A stretch of DNA of 64,000 bases, from NCBI GenBank assembly GCA_965649765.1, contig OZ287754.1, positions 33,852,001-33,916,000 on the forward strand. Reading direction: 5' to 3'. Below the pieces are notes generated by a model. The model worked only from the letters and a program-made list of their open reading frames with translations, did not search any database and was not told the origin of the DNA. The position numbers and the translations under genes were made by a program. This document shows positions 9,712-39,862 of the stretch, in pieces. The stretch is from Bispira polyomma (Eukaryota). How positions within the stretch are numbered: position 1 is the first letter of the stretch; each line of letters begins with the position of its first letter.

Positions 9712-11077
9712 TTAACCACAATGCAAAGAGTTCTACAGACTTTCACCTTCATTGTTCTTGCTTGTGTGTTATTGCATAATATCATGCGGAACAGGTACCC
9801 ATGATGGCTTCCCTGATGCTGAGGATGACAAACATGTTGTTACACCTGGGGCCTGGAAGGCTGGACTACACACGGCAGACTTACAGAATGCAGCAGGGGG
9901 AAATTGTGCAAACAGGGCTAGGAAGCAACAGGCAGTACCTGAACGAGTATTACAACTCATCACAAGGGGCTGTACCCTGGCAGGACTATACTCGGTTATA
10001 TCTCATATATTATATCTTATATGTTATTATTATTATTATTATGAAAATTTTTTTTTAATTATGATATCAAGTTGTTTTTATTGGGTTATTAACGCCAAGG
10101 GTATTGTCAAGGTATTTTCATTCCACATGATAAGGACATGCATCATAATCATCAACCAAACACAAACAGAACTTGAATACAAGGTCACCTTAAAGTAACT
10201 TGAATACAGGGTCAACACAATCACAACTTAAACACAAACACTGGGTCAACTCTGTAGTGGAGAGCTATTTCATTCTGTGTTATATGACAGTTTTGTTATT
10301 GTGAAATGACAGAGGAGTGTGAGACAGAATGACTACTGGAGAAAAAAGAATTACTTTAAAGAATTACTTTCGCTGTTTGAATAGAGTGACGATGTCTCAA
10401 ATCTAACCTATAATATTCTGTTGTATATTCTCTAAAAACAAATAAATATTACAAGACAAATAACGTAGTCTGTTGCCCAAATAGGTTAACAGTCTCCATC
10501 TCTGACCTTGTTTGACCTTGTAAGCGAAGCCAGTTCTTGCGGGTAAAATTTTTATTTAAAATTTCTACTACTACATACATTATATACAACAGCAGTTATT
10601 TGAAAACTAAAAGGTCTGTTGAGCAACAGAGATTTTTGAAACAACTTTATCCTGTTATCACTGAAAGCTGAAATCTGAATACCATATAAACTGAGTTTTG
10701 ATGTCACAGCCGCCATGTAGTTGGTCACCTGTGTAGGAGAGGTCTTGTTGAAAGCTAAAAATTCCATAAAAGCTAATAATCTTGCCACGTTAATACGTTG
10801 CACTGGACATTTTGCAAAGCAGCAGAAACCTATATATACCCTAAACATGTGCATGTAAGCCCTCTGTGTTGAGGGTCTGAACACTGAGGACACTCTGTCC
10901 AGGACCCCAGTTGTGAGTATCTTTAGGAGAGACTGCCACCTGCAATTTACATATATACATGGTTTTTTAGGTATCTTATATTGACCAGTCAAGGTCAAAT
11001 ACCCCTGGCTCAGGGTGACACCAAATTGGGTTGTCGATAAACTTTTTGATGGTATTCATTTGGCCCCCCGTTCCCTC

Positions 11078-13243
11078 TCATCTAGAGAGGGTGTCCGGCA
11101 CTACATTATGAATACCACGAATGTGTACCACTTTCATTTCGATGTTGTTTTTAGCTGTTAGTAAAAATACATTTCTGGCACATGCCGCTAGGTATGTGTT
11201 ATTAGTTTTTCCTGTGTTCAAGACTGAAACCACTGCACTGTTATCACATTTAATCATGATTTTCCAGTCTTTCCAGTGTGAACCCCACATTTTCAGAGCA
11301 ACTACTATGTTTATCATTTCTAAGTTTGCAATTCCTATATCTCTGATATTATGTGGAATTGGTATGGCATAAACCAGGTTTCCATAGCAGGCCCCTAACC
11401 CCGTTAGGCATGCATCTAATTCGATGATAGCACTGACAGGTTTGTGGTCAAAGAAAGTGACGCCACTATACTGGGCCAGAAAACACCTGAACCAATTTAA
11501 GTCCCTGTAAAAATGTGAATCCAGTGGGATGTATTTTGGATTTGTAGCTGCTCTGAGTGTGGCTAGCATTCTGTTCAAGAATATGCGTGCTGGTTTGCAG
11601 CACTTAGCAATGTACAGTAATGAACCCAGTAAAGGCTGCAGTTTCCTTTTTGTTGTATATTTTGAACCTTGCCACTGCCCTACCGCTGTTAAAATAGTGC
11701 TTAATTTTTCTGCTGGTATGGACATTGTGCCTTTGATGAAGTTTATAACTATTCCCAAACATACGCATTCAGTACTGGGGGGAACCAACTTTTTCTCACT
11801 TATAGCCAGACCTAGGTTTTCTAACAGTGTGTACAGAAATGTGTAAGCTGAGCTAGCTCTACTAGGGACCCCACAACCAATCAGATCATCTATATAATTT
11901 ATGATTTGGTATTTATTTTGGTCCATTATATACCTAACACCATCACTGAGTCTTTGAAAGATTTGGCTTCCATGTCGGAAGCCAAAGGGAAGACAGGTAT
12001 CAAAATGGAACCCTTTCCAGTATAGTCCAAGTAAGTCATAGTCTTTAGGGTCTATTTTTATGTGATGAAATGCCCGTGAGATGTCAATCTTATATATGTG
12101 TGTACCTCTGCCATATAACTTAACTTGTTCAACTATTGTGTCTATTGATGGGAACGTGAGTACAAATTTTGTGCCTAGATATGAATCTTTTTCCACCCCG
12201 GCATTGATACTAGCCCCTTCAGGCCAACTCATGTCCACTATTACTCTCCGATTTACTGAATTTGGCTTTTCCCTAGTCATGAATGGGGAACAGTGGAGGT
12301 TGTCAATTGGACTAACTGCATATGGGCCTTCCACTGCCTTGAAGGTCTTCTCATTTATGTATGTTTCGACATGGGTGGGGTGTTGGTTTGCTGAATTATG
12401 ATTGGCATAGTCACAGTCAAGTGTCATTGTTCTGTTGAAATCTAAAGGAAAGCCATAGCATATGAATTGGACTAACTGTGTGTCCCAATAGTCTACTAAT
12501 TGTTTTTCCCATTGTTCCACATGTAATTGAGATTTAATTGGAATTCTTGCTTCCTGAAAGTTACATTTACCAGTGCCACTGACTATTTTATGCAGCAGAA
12601 TTGGATCAGTTATGTCCTGGTTTCCACCTTGTGTTATACCCCTTTCGGAAGTTTGAAAGTCGCCTGTGAAGTCAGTGAGAGGGATAAAGCCAAAACGCTG
12701 TGTGTTTTGGGCCATGCATTTTTTATGAAGGTCCGAGTCACACTGAATGTCACTAAGGTTTTTGCTATGTGAGCTGATGAACTCCAGTTCATATTTGTCG
12801 TTACTAACCTGTCCATATTGCTGACTAGGTACTGCTGTTTTTGTCCCAGTCATAGTATCTGTTCTTGTTTCCCATGTGTCAGTATTATCCCTACGCCCTT
12901 TAGTTTCGGTCGTACTAAGTGCTTTCTCACTTACACTAGGGATTACCTTTTGTACTACTTGGTCGCTACATGGGATGTCACTATTATTATTTGTTTCAAC
13001 AAGTATATTTGTTTTGCCACTAACCGTGACCCTGTTATTATTATTCACATGTACTTCCCCCACCCCCTTTTTTGGGCCCGGACTAATGTCTATTTCTTTT
13101 GTTGTTTCAGGTCCCTTTTTGAGGTCGGTTTTTGTGCCCTTGTCTTGTTCCCCGTCAACCCTTAAAGGTGTAAACCTGTTGTGTAATTGAATACTGTTGT
13201 CGGGACAGACAATTTGTGTGAATGTTTTGGTTGTGTTACACAT
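11078..13243 (-). CDS. Reverse transcriptase-RNase H of Ngaro-like element
   Basis: 721-aa ORF with KIDISRAF, LPFGFRHG, YIDD, ELDAC and CDNSAVV motifs. Confidence 0.9.
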   Translation of the reverse strand: MCNTTKTFTQIVCPDNSIQLHNRFTPLRVDGEQDKGTKTDLKKGPETTKEIDISPGPKKGVGEVHVNNNNRVTVSGKTNILVETNNNSDIPCSDQVVQKVIPSVSEKALSTTETKGRRDNTDTWETRTDTMTGTKTAVPSQQYGQVSNDKYELEFISSHSKNLSDIQCDSDLHKKCMAQNTQRFGFIPLTDFTGDFQTSERGITQGGNQDITDPILLHKIVSGTGKCNFQEARIPIKSQLHVEQWEKQLVDYWDTQLVQFICYGFPLDFNRTMTLDCDYANHNSANQHPTHVETYINEKTFKAVEGPYAVSPIDNLHCSPFMTREKPNSVNRRVIVDMSWPEGASINAGVEKDSYLGTKFVLTFPSIDTIVEQVKLYGRGTHIYKIDISRAFHHIKIDPKDYDLLGLYWKGFHFDTCLPFGFRHGSQIFQRLSDGVRYIMDQNKYQIINYIDDLIGCGVPSRASSAYTFLYTLLENLGLAISEKKLVPPSTECVCLGIVINFIKGTMSIPAEKLSTILTAVGQWQGSKYTTKRKLQPLLGSLLYIAKCCKPARIFLNRMLATLRAATNPKYIPLDSHFYRDLNWFRCFLAQYSGVTFFDHKPVSAIIELDACLTGLGACYGNLVYAIPIPHNIRDIGIANLEMINIVVALKMWGSHWKDWKIMIKCDNSAVVSVLNTGKTNNTYLAACARNVFLLTAKNNIEMKVVHIRGIHNVVPDTLSR

Positions 13244-15720
13244 ACTGTGGTTTTTGACCCCCTTTTTAGGTTTTCTATCACCAACCTTCGTGTATACTGT
13301 TTTACCAGTTGCTATACTGAGTTGTTTTTCTGTTTACAGGATAACCAACTTTGTCTTTTTCTTTTCTAGTACTAGCCTTTTGTGGGAAATTGGGTGCCCA
13401 GCTCCCTTTTTTTTGCCCTCAGCCAATACCTCAGCACAAGAACGTTTGCTCCACTCATTTGTTGAATACCTTTTCCATTCCCCTGTAGCACTTCTATTAT
13501 CACTTGCTGTGCCTGAGGGAGATAGCTGTTGTATATACACCTACTACTGTACATTGTGCTACTTCTATTTCTTGCACTCCTACCTACTTTATTTACAGAA
13601 TTTGCAAGTTTTTGATTAGATTTTGTTTGTTTTTGTTTATGGCCAGCGCCTACGTGAGTGCTGGCCCCCCTTCGCTTTTTGAAACCTGTTTTTTGTTTCT
13701 GCAATCTCTTTTAGGATGGCCGTAGAGCTTACCATTTGCAAAACAAGCCTCGCACACATGAGTATACAATTTGTTCCCCATCTCATGGTCCCTACTGAAT
13801 TTACACGTTCCCTTCTGAAACCTAAAACATGGGGTCCCCGCTTTTCTATCTTTGAAACTATCTTTTGATGTCTTATAACCACTACCACTACTGCCTACTG
13901 TACTGGGAGCATGTCTCTGGGCATGTGCCCGCCTTATTCTATCTATTTTGTGGGTATCTGTCCAGTCTAATTTCCCCTCTTCCATATGATATAATAGAAC
14001 CGCGTGACTATTTTTTGCGGATTGCCATGAGTCCTGTACATCTTCTAGGAGGTCCCCCAGATAGGCCAGCATCAAGTCTTTCACATTTTGATTTTCTTCT
14101 TCTTGCATTGTGCGTGTAAAGCCTAAAACGAATTGTGAAAATGATAACTGATTGTATGTGAGCCTATCTTTGGTGGAACCCCCTAGAACATACTGGTGTG
14201 GCCATTTTACCCGACGTTTGACCTATACGTCAACTTGCCCCCCCGCCGTTGGGATTTGATTTGGTTTTTACCTGACAAGCTTTGTTCGTTCAAGACAGCG
14301 AGCTCTGCCAGCCTGGCATCCACTTGCAGCTGGATGTCTTTGGACTTAATCACATTCATACTGGGCACAATTGAATCACTACTTGGGGTTTTTACAGAAG
14401 TGCTAGGAGTACTACTAGATTGACTGCTTGAAACACATTTACACACATTCCTGCTACTTGCAGGTTGACAATCTGTAACAATATTACCAGCCTGACAATT
14501 TGGTGTACCTTTACTTGTTGAAACAACATCTTTTGTTCTTTTAACATTTTTTACCACTTTACTGCATTCAGTCGAGTACCTAACTTTTTGAGTTCTGCTA
14601 AAATTAGCACAATTATGTCACTAGATTGTACATTCTGTACTGGTAGCGACTCACCAAGTGATTGAACTTGTCCTTGTGGTGAACGTGGGGGCTGTTGTTC
14701 TATGTCCTGATCCCGGCTGTCGTCTTCGTGTTGCTGCTGCGTGATGTCCAGTATGTCGCCCTGCAGGTCTGCCATTTCCATGTCGGTTTCATCAGAGCCG
14801 TCATATTCTTCTGCTTGAGTTAGAAACGGACACCGTCTTCCTTCTGGTCTGGGGTGTTTACCCCTACACCCGGTACATGCCATGCTAGCCATTTTTTATA
14901 GTTCTGGAACTCTTGCTTTTTTTTCTTTTTTTTTTTATCAATGTTTATAGTTTTGTCTATTTCTAGAACGCTAGGTTTTTATAATTGTCAGTGTTTTTTA
15001 ATCTGAAATTTTTGTCTTTAGTCTGTTTCTGCAAACACAATGAACAATCCGGACAGACCTCTCTGGTGCTTTGCAATATATGTCTTAGTACTGCAGTGTT
15101 TCGGTTTTCTGTTATTTATTGAGCTATAAACAGCCAGGAAATTTATGCATTATATTTGGATTATATATATACGGTACTTATTTCTCTTCAAAGTACTGCC
15201 GAGTGCAGTGTAGTACTGCAGCGTTTCAGTATACAGCACACACAGCCTTGAACTGTATTGATTAAATACGTATTTCCCTACACAGTATTGCCGAGTGCTG
15301 TTTGTTTATCAGCCAACACAGCCGTGAACTGTATTGCTTATATACTTAGTTCCCTTTACAGTATTACCATGTATTGATAATATTGGTACTTCCTTTGAGA
15401 ATTACCGAGGGTTTTTTGTTAATTATTGATCTAAAAACAGCCGGAAACTTTCCTGCCAGAAACATCAACCGCGTAGAATACTAGTATATTTTGCAGAGCA
15501 CACTAGTCGTCTGTCCATTAGTCAGCACACTGTAAATCCATCCAGCTCCCTGATAGCACGATTAAAATATGTATATGTCTTTTAAAATTTGTTGTTTAAA
15601 ACTTTAAAAGGTTATATAACACTTAGGATTGTAAAACTTTTTTAATCTGGAGTCCAGAAACAAACAAATTTTTCATTGTTGACTCGTTCACAATGTTTAC
15701 AAGAATGATAATTTTCCCTC

Positions 15721-17195: not shown

Positions 17196-17888
17196 CTACA
17201 CAGACTTGTAGTCACAGTAGAGGAAGCTTGTGGGGTCCAGTCTGTTTAACCCAATGTACATGTCTATATGACTGTGATCAGTCATACCTGATCCGTAGCA
17301 GCCACAGTGCAATCCTGTAAACATATTTAATGCTAGATGTATTGGCAGAGAGTGAAATTTGTTGAGAAACTAGTAAAAAGATTGTAAAACTAATAAACAA
17401 GCAGTTTAAACAATCAGACAAGTGTATATTCAACTTGCCAATATGTGTAGCTATCTGGTCTCCTTTATTGTAAGTAGCTCCAATGGTGTATCCATCAGCG
17501 TAAAAAACAACCATGTAATAATCTGAAATAAAGATTTATGTTGTTAAGGACAATAGGGAACTCAACAAGTATAAAAATGTATGAAGAGGTTCCTCACCAT
17601 CATTTAATGTGTTTTAAATTTAGGAACACTGTTAACAGCTAATTTTAACAATTTATGTTTGTTTTAGTGTGTTAGCTATTAGCTAACAGTTAATAAATCA
17701 TGTGCATAATTCTGTATAACTAACTTGGCCAATCAGAATCAGTTGATTCGAATTCAAATCCATTGTCACAACAACTTCCATCCCCGTAGGGAGGCACTGC
17801 TTGTAGCATCCTGCCATCAAAAGGGGCATATATAGGGTCGTTGGCAGAGCACACAACATCAGTACCCAAGTGAAGACGGCCACCAGAT
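17196..17888 (-). CDS. Exons 4-6 of SH3b-M23 gene (M23 catalytic-fold domain)
   Basis: HLGTD (HxxxD), CSANDPIYAPFDG, HSH (HxH) and DPT motifs; exons 17725-17888, 17439-17522, 17196-17314; TAG at 17196-17198. Confidence 0.88.
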
Positions 17889-20800
17889 CTAAAAACAAAA
17901 CCATCATGTTAGCTTTGTGAAATAACAGGTCTAAGATACTAAGTTTTAGTGTTTTAGCGTTCACTGGGGGAAGACCATTACGGAAAAATACCACAAAATT
18001 TTGTTAAAATTGTCGGTTTGGCTACATCTATACTTTTTTTTATTACTTTTTTTTTCTACCCCTTTTACATTGATTTTGTCTTATTTTGATGTTCTATATT
18101 GTAAATTTAGCCAGATACCATGTATACCCTATTATCGTCCACTCCGTTTGGCGGGAGTGGGCCGTACCGCATTTTAGCTAAACAGTATCATGGTCTATGC
18201 ATTTCTTTATTATCATACATGCTTTTTCTAAGTGGTTGTACTTGCCTTAAGGTGAGGCTATAGTGAGGGGTGTTAGGGTGCCCGTGAGTCGCCCACGGGA
18301 CGAAGAATTGTATGGTGAGTTGTTCAGACATATTTTTTTGAGGCTCCCTATTGTTAAGTTTAGTCTAAGGTCTTCTTCTTTTCTACAACCTCACTAGTCA
18401 TGTTTCTCCTTCGGGTTGTCCTTTTTTTGGCACTGTTTGGAGTGGCTATCGCTTAAAGGGATGAGTGTAACCACCCTAGAGTGGCTCACATATCTGCTAC
18501 CTTATTGTTTAAAGTTGAAAAAAATTTCTCATACACATGTTTATGTCACAAATTTCCAACCACCGTTAATAGAAGAGATCTTGTGTTGTTACTCCTACTG
18601 GGCGGTGATGTGTCCCTTAACCCTGGTCCTGTCATGCTGGGTGTGCCAAATGCTAAATCTGTTAGAAACAAAGGTCCACTTCTTGCTGATATTGTGACAT
18701 CGCATGACCTCCACTTCCTCTGTGTTACTGAGACCCATGTCTGTCTATCTGATGCGGATAGCTTTCTACGGTCTGTTACTCCTCCTGATTTTGTGTTTTC
18801 TCAAACGTCTCGTCCCTCACATATTGGTCCCGGTGTCGGTTTCTTTATAAGATCCTCCTTCAAACCACATAAAATAGAGTCTCCTGTCTATCAATCCTTT
18901 GAAAACATGGTGGTGTCAATTGGGCTTCATGGCAGCTCCTTCTTGCTTGCCTGCGTCTATCGCCCCCCCCAGGATCATGTACCTGTATTTTTTTAGAAGA
19001 ATTCATGTCTTTTGTTGGTTTTCTGCCATTTATTAACAGTTCGTATCATGTCTGTGGTGACTTTAACATCCATGTTGATGCACCAGTTGGTGACGGTCAT
19101 AAATTTATGACCTTTCTTGATTCGTGTGATCTAAAACAGTCAGTTACACAACCTACCCATCTGCATGGTCACATTCTGAACCTCATTCTATCTCCTAGTG
19201 ATCAGGATACTATTGTGGATGTCAAAGTCTGCGATTTTATATCTGATCATGCATTAGTCAAATGCTCAATTGCCTTTCCTCAGCAGGTTGCTCATATTCC
19301 ACATATAGTGCAGTATAGGAGGTTGATTTGAATTTGCATTGGGATATTTAACGTCCACTCTAGTACCTTTTTAGGTTATATTGGGACGGGTAGTTGGAAA
19401 CGCTGGAGGAAACACTGCATACAGTTAATCAAGGTTCTGCACTGAAACCAGCGGCCCACAGTAAGGAACCTTTCCCACATGACATCAATGGTATTCGAAC
19501 TCACGCCGCCCAGAGGTGAGAGACCAGTGATTCTGAAGCGAGATGCTTGCTAACCACTAGGCCACCGCGGCCCCTGGAGTATAGGAGGTACCACCGTATA
19601 AACATGTCTGACCTCAGCACTGATCTCAAGAATACTTCCTTCATTAAGTCACCAGCCAATTCTGTGGCCAAACTTTATAAACAATAAGTACATGACTTTG
19701 GGTGATGTTCTTGACAAGCATGCACCACTTGTAACTAGAATGTCAAAGAAAGATTCTGTGCATTGGCTTTCTGATTCATATCGACGGGCAAAGTTTCTCA
19801 GGCGCCAATATGAAAGAACTTAGCGACCGGCCAAGACTCCATTGAATAGAAGTCGACTTCATTGCCAGATTGCTCGGTGCAATGTACTTGTTAACTTGGA
19901 TAAGTATAAAAGCAAATTTATCTCAGACAACAGTCACAACTTCAGGAAGCTGTGGCACGAGCTGCACAAGACCCTTAATATGGTTTCCAATGTAGCACTC
20001 CCATCGCATAAATCTGAAAAGTCATTAGCTGACAAGTTTGCTTCCTTTTCTTCAGACAAAATTAGGAAATTAGAGATACTTTTGTTCTTTATGGAACTAA
20101 AAATGATGTTCATCCTCTTTCTGACCCTCCTGAAATTACTGACTTTTCCAGAATCTCCGAAGATGCTGTTAATAAAATAATTAGTAACTCGTCTACAAAA
20201 TCCTGCATGTTGGATCCATGGCCGACATCTCTTGTCAATGAATGTAGTGATATACTACTCCCATCCATTACGAAGCTGGTAAACCGCTCACTTATTGAGG
20301 GACATGTACCTGATACTTTTAAAACAACTGTGGTTACTCCTCTTATTAAGAAGGCTTTTCTTCCGGTTGATGATCTAAAAAACTATCGACCTGTATCAGG
20401 TCTTAGTTTCATATCAAAACTGGTTAAACGTGTGGTTGCTAAGCAACTGTTAGATCATATCCTTGTCCACGACTTAGATAACCCATACCAGTCTGCATAT
20501 AAAACAGGTCATTCGACTGAGACAGCTCTTCTGTCCATAAAAAATTAAGGTCACTTATCTTTGTCAAGAGGCGAACCTGCTTGGTTTGGATTTGGGGGCT
20601 CTGTTCTTAAATGGTTCACTTCCTACTTAACTGATCGTTATCAGTCGATAAAAATTGGCTCTACTTTGGCCGATCTTTGTAAACTCTTGTTTGGTGTTCC
20701 CCAAGGTTCTGTTTTGGGCCCTCTGTTGTTTTCATTGTACACTGCCCCTCCTAGATTGGTGATTGGCAAATATAAAGGTATTAAGTTTCATTTTTATTCA

Positions 20801-23800
20801 GATGATACCCAAATTTATGTGCACTTATCCCATAAGAATACATCTACTGCCTTTGAACAGTTGAACAGGTGCCTCGACGATGTGAAGGAGTGGATGTCAA
20901 CTGGTAAACTCAAACTAAACCCCGACAAGACTAAGTTTATACTCTTTGGCTCAAAACGACAGAGAGAGAAGTTGAAAGCATGTTTTCCAGTTGACATCCT
21001 GGGTAGCCCTTTCAGCCCAGCTGATTCTGTCAAAAACCTGGGTGTATGGTTTGACTCTGACTTTTCCTTTTCTAAACACGTTTAGAGTTTTGCAAAAGTT
21101 GTTTTGTGCAACTCCGTGACTTTAGACGTGTCAGGCGGTTTCTCACTTATGATGCTTCTATACTTGTGGCCAATGCTTTTGTCAGTAGCAGATTGGATTA
21201 CTGCAATTCGTTTTTCAGGAGTCTCTCAAAGTTTAATTTACGCAAATTACAATGCATTAAAAAAGTGCAGCTAGAATTGTGTCAAATACCAGTCGATACA
21301 CCAGTATAACGCCTGCTCTAAAGAAATTGCATTGGCTCCCTGTTGAACAGCATTCAGTTTATAAAACAGCTACACTTGTTTAAAATTTTCCATTGTTTGG
21401 AATGCTCTTCCTGAGGCGATTTGTGCGTCCCCCTCACTAGCCTCTTTTAGAAAGCAGCTTAAAACCCATCTGTACACCAAACCATACCCACCTTAGTCCC
21501 AATCATCCCCCGGCGTGCTCTGTGTTGCTCGACCCTTTTCTGTCCCTGGATATTGAAATTGGATTACCGTCTTTTGTGCTGTTGCGCCTTAGAGTCCCCT
21601 TTGTTAAGGGAGACTAAGCGCTATAAAAGTCTAATTACAATACAAAAAAAAAAAAAAATACAAAAAGATCACAGTAAACATATTATAGTGACCACATCCC
21701 AAATCTAAGAGTTCCAAGAGTTGCCATGTCACAGTAAACATCTTACCTAGGAGTCCCAAAGTAGCCACCTCCCAAATCTAAGTGTTCCAAGTGTTTATTA
21801 GGTCACAGTAACATTTTAGCAAGGAGCCCTAAAGTGACCACAGCCAAAATCTAAGAGTTAAAAGTGTGCTTAGGTCTCAGTAAACATATTATCAAGGAGC
21901 CCCAAAGTGACCACAGCCCAAACCTAAGAGTTTCAAGTTTTCTTAGGTCACAGTAACATTTTAGCAAGGAGCCCTAAAGTGACCACAGCCAAAATCTAAG
22001 AGTTCCAAGTGTTGATAGGTAACAGTAAACCTCTTACCTAGGAGCCCCAAAGTGACCACAGCCAAAACTATCACATGTCCTTCCCTCATTTCCTCCAACA
22101 CCACAGTGTGTATCAAAGCATGAGCCATCATCTGAATAAAGAAAATATCAAAATTATTTCCTTTCACATGGGTTGCGTCAATGGCACATCACATAGCCCT
22201 TTACATGGCAAAGCATAGAGCTCTGTTTGATCTTTCCAGCATGCTTGGACTTTTTTTACATATATGAAGGAATAAAAAATACGCATTTTATGCTATATGT
22301 CTGGAAACATCATATCTGATGCCGTAGTGCTGTATCACATATCAGTATGACGTCAAATTTATTTTGAGTTTAATGTTATTGTCAAAAACTACAGATGATA
22401 TCACAACTGGCAGTTTACTGGTTAAGGAAAGGATAACAGAACAGCTGGTTGATAAATTGCTGCACTGTAAGTCTACTGTAATATTATTTATGCAATGCCC
22501 GAGATCCAAACTGATGGCTGTAGAGGTGGGAGTGTTATCAGTACCCCACAAATACCCAGTCGATGATGAGGTTGAAAGTCAAGTCAGAGAGACCCAGTCT
22601 GACATGCCAGGAGAAAGTGATGAACCTCTGTCAAATAGTAAGTGGGGAACTAAGATCCATGGCATGGATGAGGCAATTTCTAGAAGAGAATCCAATATTC
22701 AACAGAAAAAAACTTCAAAAAAACTGATGCAATATACGAGTGTAAGTACCAGTAAAAACAGCCTATCCAGACCCACACAGTCATAATCCAGCAACCACAG
22801 CTGCAAGTCTACTAGACAAACCAGCCACAACATCTCATCTTCATCTTAGCCACAACACCAACTTTATTGCTCAAACCACAAAAGTAGCGACTCTGTATCT
22901 GGCTGCAAAAAATCTCATGTGCCTCGACAACCTTAGTATCCTACCTCTAGCCTCAATGAAGGAAGACATAAGGACAAGGTAAACTGGACATTAATACTAT
23001 ATTATTACTGAATATTATGTACCTGTGGTTCAATATTGCTATACAGGGTGTCAGGACTGTTTTTGTGTGTTGTTTACCTGTAATGATAAATTTCGTAAAA
23101 CATTGTAAAATTATGTATATTCTATATATGTTCCATATATTGGGGTTGTTCCTGACCTAAAAATGTCCTATTGGTTGAAAGTTATCTACTGAAATACAAC
23201 TAACACCAATTAACATCAATACAAATACATTAAATGAAAAAAAAAACAATACGAAAATAAGAATCATAAACGTGCACCCAATTGCCATGTCCCTGTCAAA
23301 AAAGGGATTATAGAATTGACAAAAAGAGTTAAAGAATTGAAAAAAAGGTAATAAAATGGGATTTATTGAAAGAGTGTAAAGAGCTTAAATCAAGCTATGT
23401 GAGGTGTTCTGTGGGAACACATTGTTAGGAATGAGACTTGTTGAGAGAGTGTATCCTTCAACCAAGCTGTGTGGAGTGTTCTAGGACTTACCTGTGTGAA
23501 CACATTGTTAGGAATAAGACTTGTTAAAAGAGTATATCCTTAAACCAAGCTATGTGAGGTGTTCTGGGACTTACCTGTGGAAACATTAACAGGAATGAGA
23601 CTTGTTTGGAGAGTGTATCCTTACACCAAGCTATGTGGAGTGTTCTAGGACTTACCTGTGTGAACACATTGTTAGCAATGAGACTTGTTGAAAGAGTGTA
23701 TCCTTAAACCAAGCTTTGTGGGGTGTTCTGGGACTTACCTGTGTGCACACGTTGTTAGGAATGAGGCATGTTGAGAGAGTGTAACCTTAAACCAAGCTAT

Positions 23801-24184
23801 GTGGGGTGTTCTGGGAGTTACCTGCGTGTCCACATTGTTGAGGTTCACTCAGGTAATCATTGCTGGCATATGCAGTTTGCCCGTCATATGTAACAGTACA
23901 CCATCCCTCAGAACATGACTCAGCAAGTAGACACTCATTGGGATAAATCTGCAACACAAGGCATATAGCAGTTTGGTATGCATCATCTGCTAGATACAAT
24001 ATATGTCTATGATTATATGATTAGATAACAGCATTACTTGTCCCACTATGTTCCCTGCAGTAGAAGGTGCATCCCTGATATTTAGTGGAGAGTCAAAGCT
24101 GGAAGTCATACAGCAGACACATGTTACAAAGGCATCAGTGTCTGGGACCAGCAGTGACAGTAATATTAGAACCACAACCAACAT
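17196..24184 (-). CDS. Secreted SH3b (SH3_3) + M23-peptidase/LECT2-like protein, 6 exons, 244 aa
   Basis: Manually assembled exons 24038-24184, 23822-23948, 22038-22131, 17725-17888, 17439-17522 and 17196-17314 (735 nt) join in compatible phases 0,1,2,1,1 with no internal stop. Introns are GT-AG except intron 5 (GC-AG). Protein: MLVVVLILLSLLVPDTDA (signal) ...LNIRDAPSTAGNIVGQIYPNECLLAESCSEGWCTVTYDGQTAYASNDYL (SH3b) ...RTCDSFGCGHFGAPRSGGRLHLGTDVVCSANDPIYAPFDG...VVFY...TDHSHIDMYIGLNRLDPTSFL (LECT2/M23 HxxxD and HxH motifs). Confidence 0.88.
17965..21660 (+). mobile_element. L2-clade LINE, near full-length ORF2, decayed, in intron 3 of the SH3b-M23 gene
   Basis: APE endonuclease (VTETH, GDFNIH, ISDH), RT (GVPQGSVLGPLLF, YSDD), SRLDYCNS, 3' GCGCCTTAGAG...AGCGCTATAAAAG and A-rich tail; several stops and frameshifts; 5' boundary uncertain. 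Confidence 0.9.
19324..19575 (-). mobile_element. tRNA-derived SINE inserted in the L2
   Basis: Same family as 4907-5163; TSD AGTATAGGAGGT at 19312-19323 and 19578-19589. Confidence 0.85.
21669..22068. repeat. ~73-bp minisatellite (~5.5 copies) built from exon 3 end + splice donor
   Basis: GGAG(C/T)CC anchors at about 21750, 21823, 21896, 21968 and 22041; the unit contains the last ~30 nt of exon 3 and TAG|GTAAG. Confidence 0.85.
22038..22131 (-). CDS. Exon 3 of SH3b-M23 gene (LECT2-like Cys-rich N-terminus)
   Basis: Acceptor TTCAG|, DDGSCFDTHCGVGGNEGRTCDSFGCGHFGAPR, donor TAG|GTAAGA. Confidence 0.85.
22270..23340 (+). mobile_element. Harbinger MADF/Myb-gene relic (intron 2 of the SH3b-M23 gene)
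   Basis: Deleted copy of 37930-39780, which encodes FLEENPIFNRKDFKDYKDAQKKRLW (MADF-like). Confidence 0.5.
23385..23842. repeat. ~83-bp minisatellite (~5.5 copies) built from exon 2 end + splice donor
   Basis: (G)ACTTACCTG anchors about every 83 bp; the unit ends in AACAATGTG..CACACAG|GTAAGT on the minus strand. Confidence 0.9.
23822..23948 (-). CDS. Exon 2 of SH3b-M23 gene (second half of SH3b)
   Basis: Acceptor TTGCAG|, GWCTVTYDGQTAYASNDYL, donor CAG|GTAACT. Confidence 0.85.
24038..24184 (-). CDS. Exon 1 of SH3b-M23 gene (signal peptide + first half of SH3b)
   Basis: ATG at 24184, hydrophobic leader, LNIRDAPST motif, donor CAA|GTAATG. Confidence 0.85.
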
Positions 24185-26258: not shown

Positions 26259-27463
26259 TGTGACGACCCTTAAGCCAAGCCAATGTCCTATTTAAATAAG
26301 GTCAAAGTTCGCGTTGTGTTCATGTATGGCCAGTCGCCAAGATTACAGATTCAATTGGAATGAGCTATCAGTAGCCAGAGTTATTGAAGCCTGGTATCAA
26401 TAAAACTACCGACAGCCCGAGGTACTATAGGTTTACCACAAATAGAGTGAAAATTGCCAAATATAAACTTAAAGTATTTATTTAATAAAGTGGACTAAAA
26501 TTCGGCTTGTGTATTTTGCAATACAGCCGATGTATAATACAATAGGACATAAAAATGTACACAAATATGGTATAATATTGTAAACCAATACGGCTCCTGT
26601 ATATTACTATACAGCCGAAGTATAATATAATACAGGGCACAACACAATTAATTAAATTATAAACCTACACACATTTATCTTAAAAATGTGTGCCAACCAT
26701 ATTACTAACAGGCTATATTTAAGCTCACGAATTGTCCCTGTAAATTATATCAACACACCGATAATACAGCCTGCACCAAAAATAATACATTGTAGTAGTA
26801 ACTGTCAAATACATGTGTGTTTGTTTATCAACAAAAGGCGGTAAAAACAAAATCTTACAATAATACTCAATAAATATTAAATACTGGACTAAATTGCCTG
26901 AAAGTTACTGAAAGTATTCCTAATTAATAGTCAATCACTTTGGTTATACCGGATCCGAATAATATAACATCGAATTAATAATATAAGACAAAATGTCAGA
27001 GTAAATTAGTACAAGGATGTACCTCCGATTTCGCGGCCACGGTCACACCGAGGAGGTGTTTACCTCCGCGCCTTATATAAGCAGGAGTCGTAACCCTAAT
27101 TTGCCTACCGAACACCGAAATATATCCCCAAATGCATCAGTACACCACTTGGGAAACGAAGCTAACCGAACTACACCGACACCGAGATCAGGGATGTACA
27201 CGTAAAGTGATGACGTCATCGCCGAAATGCACAAAAATGGCGGTATATAATATATAAATATTATTAGTATTTGAATAGAAATGGTGCGAATATTTGACAT
27301 AACAACCTTAACTTCATCTTTTAAAGAGAAGTACATTTTATTTGCAATATTTTATTTGCCGTTTCTGGCTTTTATACTCCACATATTACCCAAATCACGA
27401 TCTCTTAAATCGGCGACCATATTATACAGTACTAAACTACTATGAGATGACAGGGTCATCTCA
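26259..27463 (-). repeat. 3' LTR of Gypsy element
   Basis: Direct repeat of 35552-36747; PPT (AAGGGGGGAG on minus strand) abuts at 27464-27473. Confidence 0.95.
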
Positions 27464-27842
27464 CTCCCCCCTTCTTAAAATCTGTTATGCCCTCATAACA
27501 CTCAAAGTACCATACTCTCCGAATTGACGGCTGAGTATGTGACCACTCCGGCACCTAAGCCAACAACTAATATAAATAATAAACTTGAGATATAACAATA
27601 GTAAAATGTCCATTATACAATAATATATCACCAGCATCTACAATGCATGAACACACTGGAAACCATTAATGACTGGTTATGAAGCTTAACCTTTTAAAAA
27701 CATTAAATAAAGTAACAACCACTGATACATGTGTATAATCAAATAAAACCAGTACATAGTCATGCTAAGAAATGTTCATAGAGTACACTATTTCATACTC
27801 TCTGTACTGTGAGTAAATATATATGTAATAACAGCCTAAAAC

Positions 27843-28001
27843 TGTCACTGTACTATGACAAAACAATTGTTAACTTAAAATACTGCGTCACTTTACTGTG
27901 GCAAAACAATTGTTAACTTAAAATACTGCGTCACTGTACTGTGGCAAAACAATTGTTAACTTAAAATACTGCGTCACTGTACTGTGGCAAAACAATTGTT
28001 A
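27843..28001. repeat. ~39-bp tandem repeat in Gypsy 3' UTR
   Basis: About 4 copies of GTCACTGTACTGTGGCAAAACAATTGTTAACTTAAAATACTGC-like unit. Confidence 0.85.
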
Positions 28002-28123
28002 GTTTAACATAAAAACACTGTTTTTAACACTCACCCACTATACTGTGAGTGGCAACGAAAATTCAAAATTATTATATATTTGATTTACTGCTACATACTT
28101 AATTTTTACATCTTTAATTGCAT

Positions 28124-29011
28124 TTATTCTTCCAAAAGGAACCCATCCCCCAAAACCATATCTTGAAAATGAAACATGTTGTCCAATTCGGTAGTGTCCA
28201 TATTGTCCAAAACATTGTCTTTAGAATTTAATTTAGCTTTTAGAGTCCTGATTTGTTCTTCTAGACTTTTCCTTGAACTTCTTTCCTTGGCCAGTTCTCG
28301 CTCTAAGGCATGTTCTTTAATACGTTGCTCCTTCAGTTCCAGGGCCTTCAGTTCTTTCTTGGCGGCCTTTTCTATTTCGGACCACTCATGAACTTTGCGT
28401 TGTGCCCTAACAACCTGATGGATAAGTTCCTGCTTGCGAGAAGAGTCTTGGGCAGTCAGACTGGAGCCTTCTACCAGCCGTGTCTGAGGCTGAGGCACTG
28501 ATATAGGGTCGGCTTGCTCCACTGAGCTTTCCGGTATATCAGCCCCTGGTATAACGTTATCCGCTGGGGCAGCCACCACCTCGACATCTGTTGGATCTTC
28601 AGCAGTGAACTGGACTTTAAGATTTCTTAGTGGAATGTCTTTTGGCACAAACTGTAGTTGTTGGACGGGTACTCCCTTTGCTGATTCCGTAATCGGCACA
28701 ACAGAAAGGGATGCCGATGGCTTTTTTATCAAATGTCTTTCAAGGTCGTACGGCCTTCTAAACATTCTGCAGGAGGCGTCCGCACTGCATCGGTATAACA
28801 CTATCTGTTTTTGATGGACCTCTTCCCAATGTCTTACCAGCCCAAACCTCTGGCCAAAACTCAAGTTCTTGGTTTTGCAATTGGGCACCAAACAAAGGAA
28901 CCTCCCTTTTTCTTTTTTCCAACCACACTTTCCCCCAGTCTTCTCTCCTGCCTCAAAACTATCCACCTCCTCAAACTGAGCCAGATCAAACACAAACTCG
29001 TCCATGGACAT
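28124..29011 (-). CDS. Extra (env-position) ORF of Gypsy element: C2H2-like zinc fingers + coiled coil
   Basis: Open 295-aa ORF between pol and the PPT; C-x4-C...H-x4-H and a second C-x5-C...H unit; heptad-rich C-terminus; polypyrimidine/TTTCAG acceptor just upstream. Confidence 0.7.
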   Translation of the reverse strand: MSMDEFVFDLAQFEEVDSFEAGEKTGGKCGWKKEKGRFLCLVPNCKTKNLSFGQRFGLVRHWEEVHQKQIVLYRCSADASCRMFRRPYDLERHLIKKPSASLSVVPITESAKGVPVQQLQFVPKDIPLRNLKVQFTAEDPTDVEVVAAPADNVIPGADIPESSVEQADPISVPQPQTRLVEGSSLTAQDSSRKQELIHQVVRAQRKVHEWSEIEKAAKKELKALELKEQRIKEHALERELAKERSSRKSLEEQIRTLKAKLNSKDNVLDNMDTTELDNMFHFQDMVLGDGFLLEE

Positions 29012-29093
29012 TTTGAACTAAACTGAAATTATAAAAAAAAACAAAAAAAAAACATACTGTTAGGTTATGTGATGAACACCTTTAACCTTAAAC

Positions 29094-32000
29094 TTAGTCT
29101 AAGTCAGTTTGGATGCTAACATCCCTACTATCACCTTGTGATATCCAGATAACTGGAGTATCACTGTGTCCATAGGTTTTGATATGGTCGATATGAACAG
29201 TAATAGGGTGAGAGTTTTCATCTTTCTGAACCCTGTAATTGACCTCCCCTAACCGATTTATGACTAAGTATGGCCCTTTCCAACCTCTACCAAATTTTTC
29301 TTTAGCCTTAGGAGGATAAAATACCCACACCCAGTCACCTCGCTTAAAGCTTCGTGTTTGAGCGTTGGTATCATACAAACGTTTCTGTTTTTCAGCACTT
29401 TTCCTTAAGTTTTGCCTTACAAAAGAATAAGCTTCACTCATAGCATCTCTAACCCATTCAACATACTCTACTGGACAACTAGGACCCCCCGAAGAAGTTG
29501 GACAGCCCTCATACATTAAATCTACAGGTAGCCTTAATTCCCTACCAAACATAAGAAGATTTGGTGAACACTTGGTACTTTCTTGTACTGTAGATCTATA
29601 GGCTAACATAACATATGGTAAATGATCATCCCAATCATTACCATTCTAATTAACTGTTGCCCTTAGTAACTGCCTTAGAGTTCTATTCATGCGCTCTACT
29701 AGACCATCTGACTGTGGTCGATAACGAGAAGTCCTTGTTTTTCCCCATATCTAATAACTTGCACAGTTCCTTAAAAAGCACTGACTCATAATTCCTGCCC
29801 TGGTCAGTATGGATCACCAATGGTATTCCGTAACGGCAAAACCACTGAGTCACCAAACAATCGGCCACTGTCTGAGCAGTTTGATCAGGAATCCCATAAG
29901 CCTCGACAAACTTAGTGAAATAATCTTGGACAACTAAGATATAATTGTTACCATTCTTAGTATGCACTACAGGACCCATAATATCACAAGCTATCCTTTC
30001 TAAGGGTGCACCTGCTAACTGTTGCTTTAATGGAGCCCTCTTAGGATTATGCCCAGCCTTAAAGCTCTCACACACCTTACATGTCTGACACCACCTCACA
30101 ATGTCTCGTTTATAGCCTGGCCAATAGAACCTAGTCCTGAGTTTACATACGGTTCTTCTGACACTAAAGTGTCCCCCAATTCTATTGCTATGGAACTGCA
30201 TAAAGATTTCCTTCTCCAAGTCTATGGGAACTACATACTGAAGTACTGGACAACTACTAAAGTCATCAGAAATCCATTCACGATACAAGATACCATCCTT
30301 GACCTTAAGAACTGACCACTGAGCACACAAACACCTAAACAAATCACTCTGCCCATTGATTTCTGCCTTTTGTGGTTTATCACCTCCGGCAGATTTCAAC
30401 TTCAACATGTGACTAATGTCCTCATCTTGGCACTGAAAATTTCTCAGCTCATCAAGAGACCACTTATCAGCCCAATTTGAATCACGAACCCTGGAACTAA
30501 CTGAGAACCCTCTAGATGCAATACTAAAGCCAGTGTTAGACTCACTAACCCTGCCACCTGATGCGGAGTTAGAACCACCATTCACATTACCCTCTGTAGA
30601 CTCACTATGTGATACACCAGTGTCACTAAGACCACCTGACCCAGTTTCAGTGTTGGACTCACCCTCAGACCTACCAGTGGCCTTAGATTTCCCACACCCC
30701 TGAGTATCACCCTGTCTTTTCAACTGACCCCTAGTTACCACACACACACAATCCGATAATTTCAAGGCACATTCCTCACAATCCTCACGCTTACACTTGC
30801 GTGGAGGTATCCTTGACAACCCATCGGCATTACAGTGCCAAGTCCCCTTCCTATGTTGGACTTCATAATCATAATTACTAAGAACTGACAACCACCTAGC
30901 CAACATACCTTCTTGCTCACGAAAATTCACTAACCACTTGAGCGAAGCATGATCTGTTCTTAGCAAAAACCATCTACCCCAGAGATAATGATGAAACTGC
31001 TTCATGAAAACAACACAAGCTAACAACTCCCTCATAGTGGTACAATAATTTCTTTGTGTTTTACTCAGAGTTTTGCTACCATACCCAATGACCCGTTCTT
31101 CACCATTCTCCTGCACTTGACTTAACACTCCACCACAACCATACAAACTAGCATCCGTATCAAGAATAAACAAACCCTATTGGCTAGGATAAGCTAAGAT
31201 AGGACTTGAAACTAATTTCTCCTTAAGCTTTTCAAAAGCGGCCTCGCATGACTCAGTCCACTCGTACTTCACATTTTTCTTTGTTAATTCATACAATGGA
31301 GCGGCTTCGCTCGAAAAACCCCTCACAAAGGACCTATAATAACTTGCAAATCCCAAGAAAGAACGGACTTCCTTTACACAAGAAGGTCTAGGCCAATCTA
31401 CTATAGCTTCTAATTTCTTAGGATCACAACTAACACCCTGATCAGAAACAACATGACCTAGAAACGCAACACTTTCCTGGAAAAATCTACACTTGGAAAC
31501 CTTAAGTTTTAACCTTGCCCAGCGAAACCTTTCAAATATCACCTGCAAACTCTCAAATGTTTCCTCAAAATCAGTACCAAATGAGATTACATCATCTAAG
31601 TACAGCACACATTTTTTCCACTGTAACCCACGGAGGACTTTCTCCATTAGAGACTCAAAAGTTGATGGAGCAGTTGTTAACCCAAAGGGCATGACAGTGA
31701 ACTGCATCAACCCTTTCCTAGTATAAAAAGCTGTTTTACACTTGTCCCTTTCAATCATTGGAATTTGATGATAGCCACTGGCCAAATCCATAGTACAAAA
31801 GAACCTAGCTCCACCAAGAGAAGATAAACATTCCTGTGTATTAGGCAATCCTACCGCCGATTTTCTAGATATTTCATTAATCGTGCGATAATCCACACAA
31901 ACGCGAATACTACCATCCTTTTTAGTTACAATAACTAAAGGTGAAGCCCATGGACCATCACTACACTCTATTAACCCCTGTTCCTCCAATATATCAAGTT

Positions 32001-35544: not shown

Positions 35545-35551
35545 AAATTTC

Positions 35552-36747: not shown

Positions 36748-39700
36748 ATATCTTGCAACACATTGATATGGTGTTGGTTTGTTTGTGAGTGAAGTATTTG
36801 TAAATCTTGCCTTTGATAGTCTTTATAGTTATCTCTGTCTAATTTGCCTTGACTTAATTTTGCTTCATAAAGTGTCGAACAGAATGCACTTTAAATAACC
36901 TTAAGTTTGCATTTTGTATCCTAAAAATTTGCTTCCTTTATCTGACTGTATGGTTTCTGGTGTCCTTTCCTTAAAAGCCAGTGAGAAACAGCTTTATCTC
37001 CAGATTTGTTTATCAAGGTATTGTCTACACATACTGTGAAAATATATCTATGGCTAATTTTGCTATATTTATCTGGTCGACATCCCACGGCTGCTCTATC
37101 GTCAATGCAATGATTTTGTTTCTTTTAATATTCCTTCTTGTAGGTTTGTGCAACATATACATGGTATGTGTTTAGTCCACCTCACCAGGATTTCACATCT
37201 GTTAGAGTTACGTACCATTCTTCTTTATTTACAACCTCATAAAGCTTTTCAGGCTCAGAAAAACTAGCAGGCTGGACAGGATTTAAGTAAATTGAATTCA
37301 TAAGTTCGTTCACTATTTTTTCTTTACACTAGGATTTGGCAAGTAAGACAGTAAAAAGAGGGTTTGAGGTGCTTAATTTTTACAAGTGTACAGGTAAAAT
37401 ATAAAATAAAGTAGTAATTTTTCCAATATTTTGAAATTTTCAACACCAGCCAAACTATGAGAAACAAGGAATTGTTGAGGCGAATGTGATACTCAGGTCC
37501 CACAGTGGCAAATTGGGAGCGTGAATCATAGTGAATCTGAAGATCGCCATGGATTGTAGTGGCTTTTTTGTAGTGGTAGCTTCTTAATAACCTCCTTGTA
37601 CAAACACTCACCATCCCTCTTTATCCTTGCCACCTTTGATCAGACCAACTATTCTCCACAATCAGAAGCCACATTTTATTGGTAGTGAGGCCCCAAAGTG
37701 ACCACAGCCAAAACTATCACATGTACTTCACTCATTTCCTCCAACACCACAGTGTGTATAAAAGCATGAGCCATCAGCTGAATAAAGAAAATATCAAAAT
37801 TGTTTCCTTTCACAACGGTTGTGTCAATGGCACATCACATAGCCTGTTACATGGCAAAGTATATAGCTCTCTGTTTGATTTTTTCCAGCATGTTTGGACG
37901 GCATTTACATATATGAATGAATGAAAAATACTGCATTTTATGCCATATGTCTGGAAACATCATATCTGATGCCGTAGTGCTGTATCACATGTCAGTATGA
38001 CATGTCAGTACGTCAAATAAGTGTTTTTTTAGTATAATGTTATTGTCAAAAACTACAGATGATATCACGACTGGCTGGTTAATAAATTTCTACACTGTAA
38101 GTCTACTGTAATATTCGTTATGCAATGCCCGAGATCCAAACTGGTGGCTGTAGAGGTGGGAGTGTTATCTGTACCCCACAAATACCCAGTCAGGGAAAGA
38201 TAACGAGGTTGAAAGTCAAGCCAAAGAGACCAAGTCTGACATGCCAGGAGAGAGTGATGAACCTCTGTCATATAGCAAGTGGAGAACCAAGATCCATGGC
38301 ATGGATGATGCAGTTTCTAGAAGAGAATCCAATATTCAACAGAAAAGACTTCAAAGATTATAAAGACGCCCAGAAGAAGAGGCTCTGGGTTGACAAGGTT
38401 GTATCTCTGGACTAGCCTTAATGTGTGATGGCACCAGGAATGAACACTCTATACCATGCTCACCAAAGTAGTGCCTGGAGCTATGGTCAAGACGTTGACA
38501 GAACAGGAACAACAAATCCTGGCCAAATCCGACTTCTTTAAGGGGAACATAACCTGCCAAACTGGCTGTGTCAGCTTCAAGATAAGTATAACAATGTGTC
38601 ATTGAATTGGCACGGTTTTTTCTGTTTATTAATTTTGATATTGACTTGTAATTGAATTTTTTAATTTGTGTGGCCTGGGGTTGTTTCTCATTTGATTAAT
38701 AACATTGAATCGTAAAAGTAAAATAATAGAATGGATAATGTAATGCAATATTAATTGCAAAAAGAATAATTTGAATTTCAGTCCCAGAAATTTACCATAC
38801 TTTAAAATGTATTTAAGCTTTCTTCTGTCTGTTATTATTTGTCACTAATGTTGTTTTTCAATGTCTTACCATAACAGATTGTGCCACAAACCTGCATACA
38901 GCCAAGGAACTACAGCCCAGCTTTCGTCACTTATAGAAACAGAGGTTTAGCAGCCTAGGACCAAACACAGAGATGCCTGAGCTTTAATGCTATAGGCACC
39001 CAAACCACTGTACCCAAGGCATCCAGGATCCCAATGGGGAGGGAGAGTTCATATGTGAGCCGGTGGAACCAAGAGCAGATTGTCAATATTCTGTTCAGGC
39101 ACAAGGCCCGGTCTCAAGACTGCTGTACACTCTGCATGTTTGTGATTGAAACTGATGCAATATACGCGTGTAAGTATCAGTAGAAACAGCCTATCCAGAC
39201 CCACACAGTCATAATCCATAATCCTGCAACCACAGCTGCAAGTCTACTGGACGAACCAGCCACAACATCTCATCTTCACCTTAGCCACAACACCAACTTT
39301 GTTGCTCAAACCCCAAAAGTAGCGACTCTGTATCAGGCTGCAAAATATCTCATTTACCTCGACAGCTTGCAGAGCTCAGTATTCTACCTATAGCCTCAAT
39401 GGAGGAAGACATAAGGACAAGGTAAACTGGACATTAATACTTTTTCAATACCTATTATTATTTATTATGTACCCGTGGTTTAATATTGCTATATAGGGTG
39501 TCGGGGAATGTTTTTTGTGTGTTGTTTACCTGTTATGATAAATTTCGTGAAACATTGTAAATTAATGTATATTCCATATATGTTCCATATATTGGGGTTG
39601 TTCATGACCTAAAACTGTCCTATTGTTTGAAACTTATCTACTGAAATACAACTGACACTAATTAACATCAAAACATTAAACAAAAAAACAAAAATAAGAT

Positions 39701-39862
39701 TGATAAACGTGCACCCAATTGCCATGTTCCTGTCAAAAAAGGGGTTATAGAATTAACAAAAAGAGTTGAAGAATTGAAAAAAGGTAGACTTGTTGAAAGA
39801 GTATATCCTTAAACCAAGCTAGGCCTAAAAGGGAAGTATGAATTAAGCTGCGAGTAAACAGG

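What the first reader, a model, noticed from the sequence alone, without database searches (positions are those of the whole stretch)
17196..24184. Hidden intact animal gene fusing a bacterial-type SH3b cell-wall-binding domain to a LECT2-like M23 domain (lysostaphin-like architecture)
Seen: six small exons spread over 7 kb of TE and repeat DNA splice in phase into a stop-free 244-aa protein with a signal peptide, an SH3_3-like motif (LNIRDAPST...GWCTVTYDGQTAYASNDYL) and the M23 zinc-ligand motifs HLGTD and HSH. Established: SH3b domains are typical of bacterial and phage peptidoglycan hydrolases, lysostaphin pairs M23 with SH3b (reverse order, SH3_5 subtype), and vertebrate LECT2 is an M23-fold protein without SH3b. 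Inference: a secreted antibacterial effector or peptidoglycan-recognition protein, possibly with a horizontally acquired SH3b. An intron inside the SH3b and added cysteines argue for a domesticated gene and against contamination. The gene staying intact amid decayed neighbours suggests selection.
Basis: partly seen in the sequence, partly recalled or inferred. Interest (0 to 1): 0.88.

Follow-up and report, generated by a model that had tools for sequence, protein, structure and literature searches.

The report
Worm LECT2 with bacterial-wall binding domain
Segmented worms carry a conserved secreted protein that joins a domain normally used by bacteria and phages to grip the bacterial cell wall onto a relative of our immune protein LECT2, which suggests that LECT2-type proteins act on, and may still cut, bacterial walls.

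Summary
Observation confirmed: six minus-strand exons (24184-17196, last intron GC-AG) give a stop-free 244-aa protein. The genome holds two paralogs: a 7-exon gene on C1 and its intact intronless retrocopy, which independently proves the SH3b-M23 joined mRNA. Purifying selection is strong (pN 0.25 vs pS 0.75). Pfam SH3_3 passes its cut-off on the retrocopy; the model matches LECT2 (Z 20.8) and Bacillus SH3b (Z 10.7). The fusion is an old annelid family (Paralvinella, Dimorphilus, about 15 soil or unlabelled transcripts). The M23 half is inherited animal LECT2 (three intron sites shared with a crocodilian LECT2 gene; animal clade SH-aLRT 100), not a transferred lysostaphin. SH3b modules are already known in annelid and bivalve lysozymes; this fusion was not found in the papers searched. 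It keeps all zinc ligands but has LECT2's Tyr in place of one catalytic His. That Tyr is in 109 of 111 LECT2-like proteins, including a phage gene in the endolysin slot, so activity is not excluded. Best reading: a secreted, wall-targeted bacteriolytic enzyme (about 50%); rival: a non-catalytic wall sensor (30%). No RNA or activity evidence. The scan's earlier notes hold no report of this fusion.

The parts
24038..24184 (-). Exon 1: ATG, hydrophobic signal peptide (about aa 1-18), CxCC, first half of SH3b (LNIRDAPST); phase-0 GT donor
   Evidence: in-frame stop just upstream of the ATG; weak SH3_3 match to profile positions 2-18
23822..23948 (-). Exon 2: second half of SH3b (GWCTVTY..AYASNDY) and the PxxC closing the domain; phase-1 donor
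   Evidence: Pfam SH3_3 E 6.6e-5, positions 30-54 of the profile; 59% and 51% identity to the two paralogs
22038..22131 (-). Exon 3 (94 nt, phase 1 to 2): LECT2 N-terminal cysteine segment, RTCD..GCG.FGAP-R; equivalent of vertebrate LECT2 exon 2 (97 nt, phase 1 to 2)
17725..17888 (-). Exon 4 (164 nt, phase 2 to 1): HxxxD zinc motif (H129, D133), YAPF, family-specific CCD loop; equivalent of vertebrate LECT2 exon 3 (146 nt, phase 2 to 1)
   Evidence: Pfam M23 E 0.005
17439..17522 (-). Exon 5: VFY motif with Tyr185 (17502-17500) at the site of LytM His260; conserved His204; ends at a GC donor
17196..17314 (-). Exon 6: LHCGCY loop, MTDHSH (H219, zinc ligand H221), DPT, stop codon
23409..23839 (.). 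83-bp tandem array that repeats the end of exon 2 and its donor into intron 2; extension to any later donor copy meets a stop 13 codons into the intron
21687..22067 (.). 73-bp tandem array that repeats the end of exon 3 and its donor into intron 3
18481..21660 (+). Decayed LINE (endonuclease and RT remnants, poly-A tail) that makes up most of intron 3
37690..39821 (-). Decayed partial duplicate of the gene (intron 2 and exon 3, 85% nt, stop codon in the exon-3 copy); a copy of the upstream region lies at 44858-45670; exons 1-2 not found between

Best explanation
A secreted, disulfide-stabilised annelid LECT2-family protein to which a bacterial-type SH3b (SH3_3) module was added between the signal peptide and the LECT2 domain. 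Shown: gene structure, family, folds, ancestry, selection, zinc ligands. Inferred mechanism: it is secreted into gut lumen or mucus; the SH3b binds peptidoglycan peptide stems or cross-bridges and holds the M23 groove on the wall; zinc bound by H129, D133 and H221 polarises a peptide bond, the loop-1 Arg stabilises the oxyanion and H219 activates water, with Tyr185 (possibly helped by the family-invariant His204) standing in for LytM His260; cutting cross-links lyses or digests bacteria, as the SH3b-lysozymes of earthworms and potworms are thought to do.
For: SH3_3 29.4 bits over cut-off 27 on the intronless paralog; fold match of residues 1-66 to Bacillus anthracis SH3b Z 10.7, rmsd 1.7, to phage and pneumococcal hydrolase SH3b Z 8.9-9.0, above eukaryotic SH3 (Z 6.5). 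M23 domain matches LECT2 Z 20.8, rmsd 1.4 (E 1e-15). Both zinc His, the Asp, the first His of HxH and the loop-1 Arg are nearly invariant in 111 LECT2-like proteins, and Tyr is at the second-His site in 109, so Tyr is a clade signature, not an animal decay. Salicola phage CGphi29 SLPG_00042 is a Tyr-type LECT2-like M23 placed after the tail genes and before a small membrane protein and an Rz-like spanin, with no other wall hydrolase among 29 proteins scanned. A second protein of the animal LECT2 clade is fused to PG_binding_1 (P0030): two different wall-binding modules recruited to the same domain. Annelid SH3b-lysozymes are gut-expressed and proposed to bind peptidoglycan (PMC11083476). Purifying selection on both halves. 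The window protein is acidic (29 D+E, about 8 K+R), which argues against a cationic membrane killer.
Against: Human LECT2 has the same Tyr and is reported as lacking the catalytic His and as having no shown enzymatic activity (PMC9662197; PMC8174566). Pfam M23 score 20.3 is under the 28.7 cut-off. The phage gene's activity is inferred from gene order only. The position of His204 relative to the zinc could not be measured (no coordinates returned). SH3b domains also bind ligands other than peptidoglycan.
Confidence: 0.5

Rival explanations
1. Non-catalytic peptidoglycan sensor or opsonin: SH3b (and the dead M23 groove) binds the wall, and the LECT2 domain signals to phagocyte receptors, as vertebrate LECT2 does.
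For: Tyr in place of the LytM His260; vertebrate LECT2 is a receptor ligand without shown enzyme activity; extra cysteine loops (CCD, HCGC) could narrow the groove.
Against: The same Tyr is in phage and bacterial relatives that keep all other catalytic residues, one in an endolysin slot; in every characterised case I read, SH3b sits on a hydrolase.
Confidence: 0.3
2. A host-directed extracellular ligand (patterning or adhesion, like C. elegans LECT-2) in which the SH3b fold has become a protein-interaction module unrelated to bacteria.
For: C. elegans LECT-2 bridges L1CAM, MNR-1 and DMA-1 in dendrite patterning (PMC10034042); the three fusion genes are the only LECT2-like genes found in this genome, so they may carry the general LECT2 role.
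Against: SH3_3 signature residues are kept well enough to pass the Pfam cut-off; the family is abundant in soil and unlabelled transcript assemblies and has swapped in other modules, including PG_binding_1.
Confidence: 0.13
3. The family is real but this copy is a dying paralog or yields mainly an SH3b-only product (read-through or mis-splicing at the repeated donors; GC donor; LINE in intron 3).
For: Repeated donor copies in introns 2 and 3, a stop 13 codons into intron 2, a decayed duplicate nearby, no RNA evidence.
Against: Open frame over all six exons with saturated synonymous and low non-synonymous divergence from both paralogs (Fisher p 1e-23 and 5e-29); all family-invariant residues kept; the GC donor fits the strong G|GCAAGT consensus.
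Confidence: 0.05
4. Contamination or a recent whole-gene transfer of a bacterial SH3b-M23 hydrolase.
For: Bacillota and Chloroflexota have M23 + SH3_3 proteins.
Against: Five spliceosomal introns on a 70-Mb chromosome-scale contig; three intron sites shared with a crocodilian LECT2 gene; M23 domain nests with cnidarian and vertebrate LECT2 (SH-aLRT 100); orthologs in two other annelid genomes.
Confidence: 0.01

Closest known systems
LECT2 / MIM-1 (animal M23 fold; PDB 5B0H)
   Same: Secreted; same fold (Z 20.8, rmsd 1.4, 35% identity); HxxxD and HxH; Tyr at the second-His site; RxCD..GCG..GA.R N-terminal segment; intron sites phase 1, 2, 1 shared with the gharial gene.
   Different: Extra N-terminal SH3b of about 70 aa; added CCD and HxGLHCGC loops and C-terminal Cys; acidic rather than basic; 244 vs 151 aa.
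SH3b-containing i-type lysozymes of clitellate annelids and bivalves (Ealb-iLys, Ea-iLys, HcLyso4; PMC11083476)
   Same: Signal peptide, then a disulfide-rich SH3b, then a wall-directed domain, in annelids.
   Different: Catalytic partner is a GH22i muramidase, not M23. Whether the two SH3b modules share one origin was not tested; none was found within 10 kb upstream of this genome's four destabilase loci.
Lysostaphin / ALE-1 and bacterial M23 + SH3_3 hydrolases
   Same: M23 fold paired with an SH3b wall-binding module.
   Different: Order reversed; SH3_3 rather than SH3_5 (Z 6.3 to lysostaphin SH3b); M23 is LECT2-type with Tyr for His; disulfides and introns; independent fusion.
Phage and bacterial LECT2-like M23 proteins (e.g. 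Salicola phage CGphi29 SLPG_00042; ESM Atlas cluster of 315, 60% viral)
   Same: Same Tyr-type active site and often the CD..GCG.YGA.RG segment; TM 0.83.
   Different: No SH3b, no added cysteine loops; uncharacterised; fall outside the animal clade in the tree.
Fungal GH24/GH184 muramidases with SH3-like wall-binding domain (PMC10394673)
   Same: Eukaryotic, disulfide-stabilised N-terminal SH3b-like module on a secreted wall hydrolase (Z 7.5-7.8).
   Different: Glycoside hydrolase partner; more distant SH3 fold.

Membership tests
LECT2 family | M23 fold closest to LECT2 rather than to bacterial M23 | tested here: met
   On the intronless paralog: E 1e-15 vs 2e-3; Z 20.8 vs at most 14.5
LECT2 family | Zinc motifs HxxxD and HxH | tested here: met
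   H129/D133 and H219/H221 in the window exons
LECT2 family | Tyr in place of the second catalytic His; N-terminal CD..GCG segment | tested here: met
   VFY motif, Tyr185
LECT2 family | Descent from the animal LECT2 gene (tree, introns) | tested here: met
   Animal clade SH-aLRT 100 in a quick, midpoint-drawn tree; gharial exons 46/97/146 nt, phases 1,2,1 match window introns 2-4
LECT2 family | Single-domain (or tandem M23) architecture | tested here: not met
   Additional SH3b domain; hence a variant
SH3b (Pfam SH3_3, PF08239) | Profile score above gathering threshold and SH3b fold | tested here: met
   29.4 bits vs 27 on the intronless paralog; window exon 2 alone 23.4 bits; Z 10.7. The joined window protein was not searched.
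SH3b (Pfam SH3_3, PF08239) | Binds peptidoglycan | not testable with these tools
   Needs a pull-down
Active M23B peptidoglycan endopeptidases (LytM, lysostaphin) | Second catalytic His about 30 residues before HxH | tested here: not met
   Tyr185 (definition from PMC9662197)
Active M23B peptidoglycan endopeptidases (LytM, lysostaphin) | Pfam Peptidase_M23 above cut-off | tested here: inconclusive
   20.3 vs 28.7 for the paralog; 28.6 and 32.3 for family members P0001 and P0182
Active M23B peptidoglycan endopeptidases (LytM, lysostaphin) | Cleaves peptidoglycan peptides | not testable with these tools
   Needs an enzyme assay
Lysostaphin | N-terminal M23 with C-terminal SH3_5 | tested here: not met
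   Reverse order; SH3_3, no SH3_5 hit

The most novel reading that the evidence does not exclude
This is an active animal M23 peptidoglycan endopeptidase, the first of its class in animals, and the Tyr-type active site shared by animal LECT2 and phage LECT2-like proteins is a working catalytic variant; the ancestral job of LECT2 was to cut bacterial walls, and the vertebrate cytokine and nematode patterning roles came later.
Probability: 0.35. Interest if true: 0.82.

Novelty: new variant of a known kind. Interest (0 to 1): 0.6.

Why it matters
LECT2 is a much-studied human hepatokine and amyloid protein that keeps a complete zinc site of a bacterial wall-cutting enzyme family but has no known substrate. 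A conserved animal LECT2 carrying a wall-binding module, a second one carrying PG_binding_1, and a phage relative in a lysis cassette point to peptidoglycan as the original target and give small, expressible proteins with which to test it. If active, it adds a new class to animal bacteriolytic enzymes (beside lysozymes and PGRP amidases) and a marker for bacterial feeding or defence in worms. If inactive, it is still a new architecture for a wall sensor.

Tried and rejected
The joined window protein was not sent to any search tool: exons were searched one by one by reference, and the genome's own intronless paralog (L005:1129-1857) served as a stand-in for profile, homolog and fold searches; exons were joined only inside scripts to check the frame. 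A GT donor for intron 5 was tried and breaks the frame; the GC donor restores it. An exon-3 candidate near 22850-23000 was rejected (wrong phase, no homology). Pfam SH3_3 scan of the genome returned only ordinary eukaryotic SH3 proteins. A family SH3b profile found no further SH3b genes in the genome and none upstream of four destabilase loci; sensitivity for split exons is low. The SH3b tree (71 columns) shows one animal clade (SH-aLRT 97) but no donor. The primary LECT2 structure paper is not held, so its content is cited through reviews. Six literature searches found no paper on an SH3b-LECT2 fusion or on LECT2-like endolysins; subscription journals are largely missing. Weak NCBIfam hits to Bacillus EntFM/EntA (19 bits vs cut-offs 560-720) reflect the SH3b only; this is not a toxin. 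The careful M23 tree did not finish; the quick tree was used.
Full report
1. Observation. The exons are 24184-24038, 23948-23822, 22131-22038, 17888-17725, 17522-17439 and 17314-17196; they join in phases 0, 1, 2, 1, 1 to 244 codons plus a stop, with 17 cysteines. Four introns are GT-AG; intron 5 needs a GC donor (a GT alternative breaks the frame). An in-frame stop lies just upstream of the ATG and the first 18 residues are hydrophobic.

2. Independent proof of the splice model. Searching the own genome exon by exon gave two paralogs. One is a seven-exon gene on contig C1 (94.184-94.198 Mb) with the same five intron sites, GT at the fifth, plus one in the signal peptide, and an open frame. 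The other is an intronless ORF on C7 at 58.136 Mb that matches all seven C1 exons at 80-93% nucleotide identity, joined exactly: a retrocopy, that is, a fossil cDNA showing that SH3b and M23 exons were spliced into one mRNA. It is itself intact, with dN/dS 0.33 against C1 (Fisher p 1e-6). The window gene against C1 has pS 0.75 (saturated) and pN 0.25 (p 5e-29), for the SH3b exons and the M23 exons alike.

3. Domains. On the retrocopy, Pfam SH3_3 scores 29.4 bits (cut-off 27) over the whole profile and Peptidase_M23 20.3 bits (cut-off 28.7); window exon 2 alone gives SH3_3 at E 7e-5 and exon 4 M23 at E 0.005. The best solved relative is LECT2 (E 1e-15). The AlphaFold model (pLDDT 90) aligns residues 75-217 to LECT2 at Z 20.8, rmsd 1.4, well above bacterial M23 domains (at most 14.5), and residues 1-66 to a Bacillus anthracis SH3b at Z 10.7, a Clostridium phage endolysin at 9.0 and pneumococcal LytB at 8.9, above fungal muramidase SH3-like modules (7.5-7.8), eukaryotic SH3 (6.5) and lysostaphin's SH3b (6.3).

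4. Family. Homolog searches found the full architecture in Dimorphilus gyrociliatus (DgyrCDS825), in Paralvinella palmiformis (UniRef name 'SH3b domain-containing protein'; the public model skips two exons, the true gene is six exons and 237 aa), in a compact-intron animal gene within a marine metagenome (L031, introns 1-4 at the window's sites) and in about 15 clusters of short transcript-like contigs from JGI and Logan whose species are not given (one is, from my recollection of the sample id, a forest-soil metatranscriptome). Both named genomes are annelids; other agents of this scan also read this genome as an annelid (not tested by me). The family shares extra CCD and HxGL(H/Y)C loops and forms one side of a branch (support 79). 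Word-index searches are insensitive, so the range is a lower bound.

5. Origin. A crocodilian LECT2/MIM-1 gene has exons of 46, 97 and 146 nt with phases 1, 2, 1; window exons 3 (94 nt, 1 to 2) and 4 (164 nt, 2 to 1) end at the same aligned codons, and Paralvinella has all three introns. In a tree of 111 M23 domains the family groups with Hydractinia, coral and vertebrate LECT2 at SH-aLRT 100 (quick method, arbitrary root). So the M23 half is the inherited animal LECT2 gene, and the SH3b was placed between its signal peptide and its first phase-1 intron. The SH3b carries an intron at one site here and in L031 and at another in Paralvinella and Dimorphilus, and six conserved cysteines that the bacterial matches lack, so it has been resident for a long time. 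The animal SH3b sequences form one clade (97) with no resolvable donor. SH3b modules with three disulfides are already described on i-type lysozymes of clitellates and bivalves, gut-expressed in Eisenia (PMC11083476), and on fungal muramidases (PMC10394673). A bacterial origin of the module is likely from its distribution, but it may have reached LECT2 by shuffling inside the annelid genome.

6. Mechanism. Active M23 enzymes use HxxxD and the second His of HxH for zinc, the first His of HxH and another His about 30 residues earlier for water activation; LECT2 lacks the latter (PMC9662197) and has no shown activity. The window protein keeps H129, D133, H219, H221 and the loop-1 Arg and has Tyr185 at the missing-His site. 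That Tyr is present in 109 of 111 LECT2-like domains, most of which fall outside the animal clade and, where checked, come from bacteria or phage-like contigs. In Salicola phage CGphi29 such a gene follows the tail genes and precedes a 62-aa one-helix membrane protein and an Rz-like spanin, and no other wall hydrolase was found among 29 proteins scanned: by gene order it is the endolysin. Another member of the animal clade is fused to PG_binding_1 (P0030; host unknown). The fusion family also has an invariant extra His (204) next to the loop that covers the groove; its geometry could not be measured. Together these make a wall-targeted, zinc-dependent endopeptidase for digesting or controlling bacteria the best reading (0.5), a non-catalytic wall sensor second (0.3) and a host-directed ligand third (0.13). 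The strongly acidic sequence speaks against membrane killing by charge.

7. Novelty and verdict. Both modules are known in animals; their fusion was not found in the literature searched and appears only in automatic annotations. It is a new variant of the LECT2 family, not a member of the lysostaphin family (order, SH3 subtype and catalytic His fail). Its value is that it makes the unknown ancestral function of LECT2 directly testable. Interest 0.6; 0.82 if it proves to be an active enzyme (probability about 0.35 for the full claim including the ancestral role).

Noticed in passing
L062:3836-5111 (Salicola phage CGphi29, SLPG_00042-45): Unannotated LECT2-like, Tyr-type M23 gene in the endolysin position of a lysis cassette; a large uncharacterised phage and bacterial LECT2-like clade exists (Atlas cluster of 315, 60% viral).
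   Followed up: partly
L061:177-863 (P0030): Secreted PG_binding_1 + LECT2 fusion that falls in the animal LECT2 clade; host unknown.
   Followed up: partly
L033:18-857: Same CCD-type LECT2 domain behind two cysteine-rich repeats instead of SH3b; the public gene call is truncated to 102 aa.
   Followed up: no
G000:C7:58136280-58137011 (L005): Intact retrogene of the C1 paralog, dN/dS 0.33.
   Followed up: yes
L030:12676-14240: The NCBI model of the Paralvinella gene (177 aa) has a wrong start and skips two exons; the true gene is 237 aa. A faint SH3_3 gene lies about 10 kb upstream.
   Followed up: partly
window 23409-23839 and 21687-22067; C1 paralog near 94194400-94195000: Tandem arrays that copy a splice junction into the intron, in both paralogs at different junctions; other agents of this scan call these 'mirages'.
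   Followed up: partly
window 26259-36738: Gypsy-type LTR retrotransposon with 1189-bp LTRs 98.3% identical; pol split over several ORFs.
   Followed up: no
window 10552-14108 and 41186-42826: Two DIRS-like elements (RT and recombinase-like ORFs), minus and plus strand.
   Followed up: no
window 52790-53847: Innexin-like coding exon on the plus strand with a frameshift near 53010 (pseudogene or assembly error).
   Followed up: partly
window 61236-61805: PIF/Harbinger-type nuclease ORF fragment.
   Followed up: no
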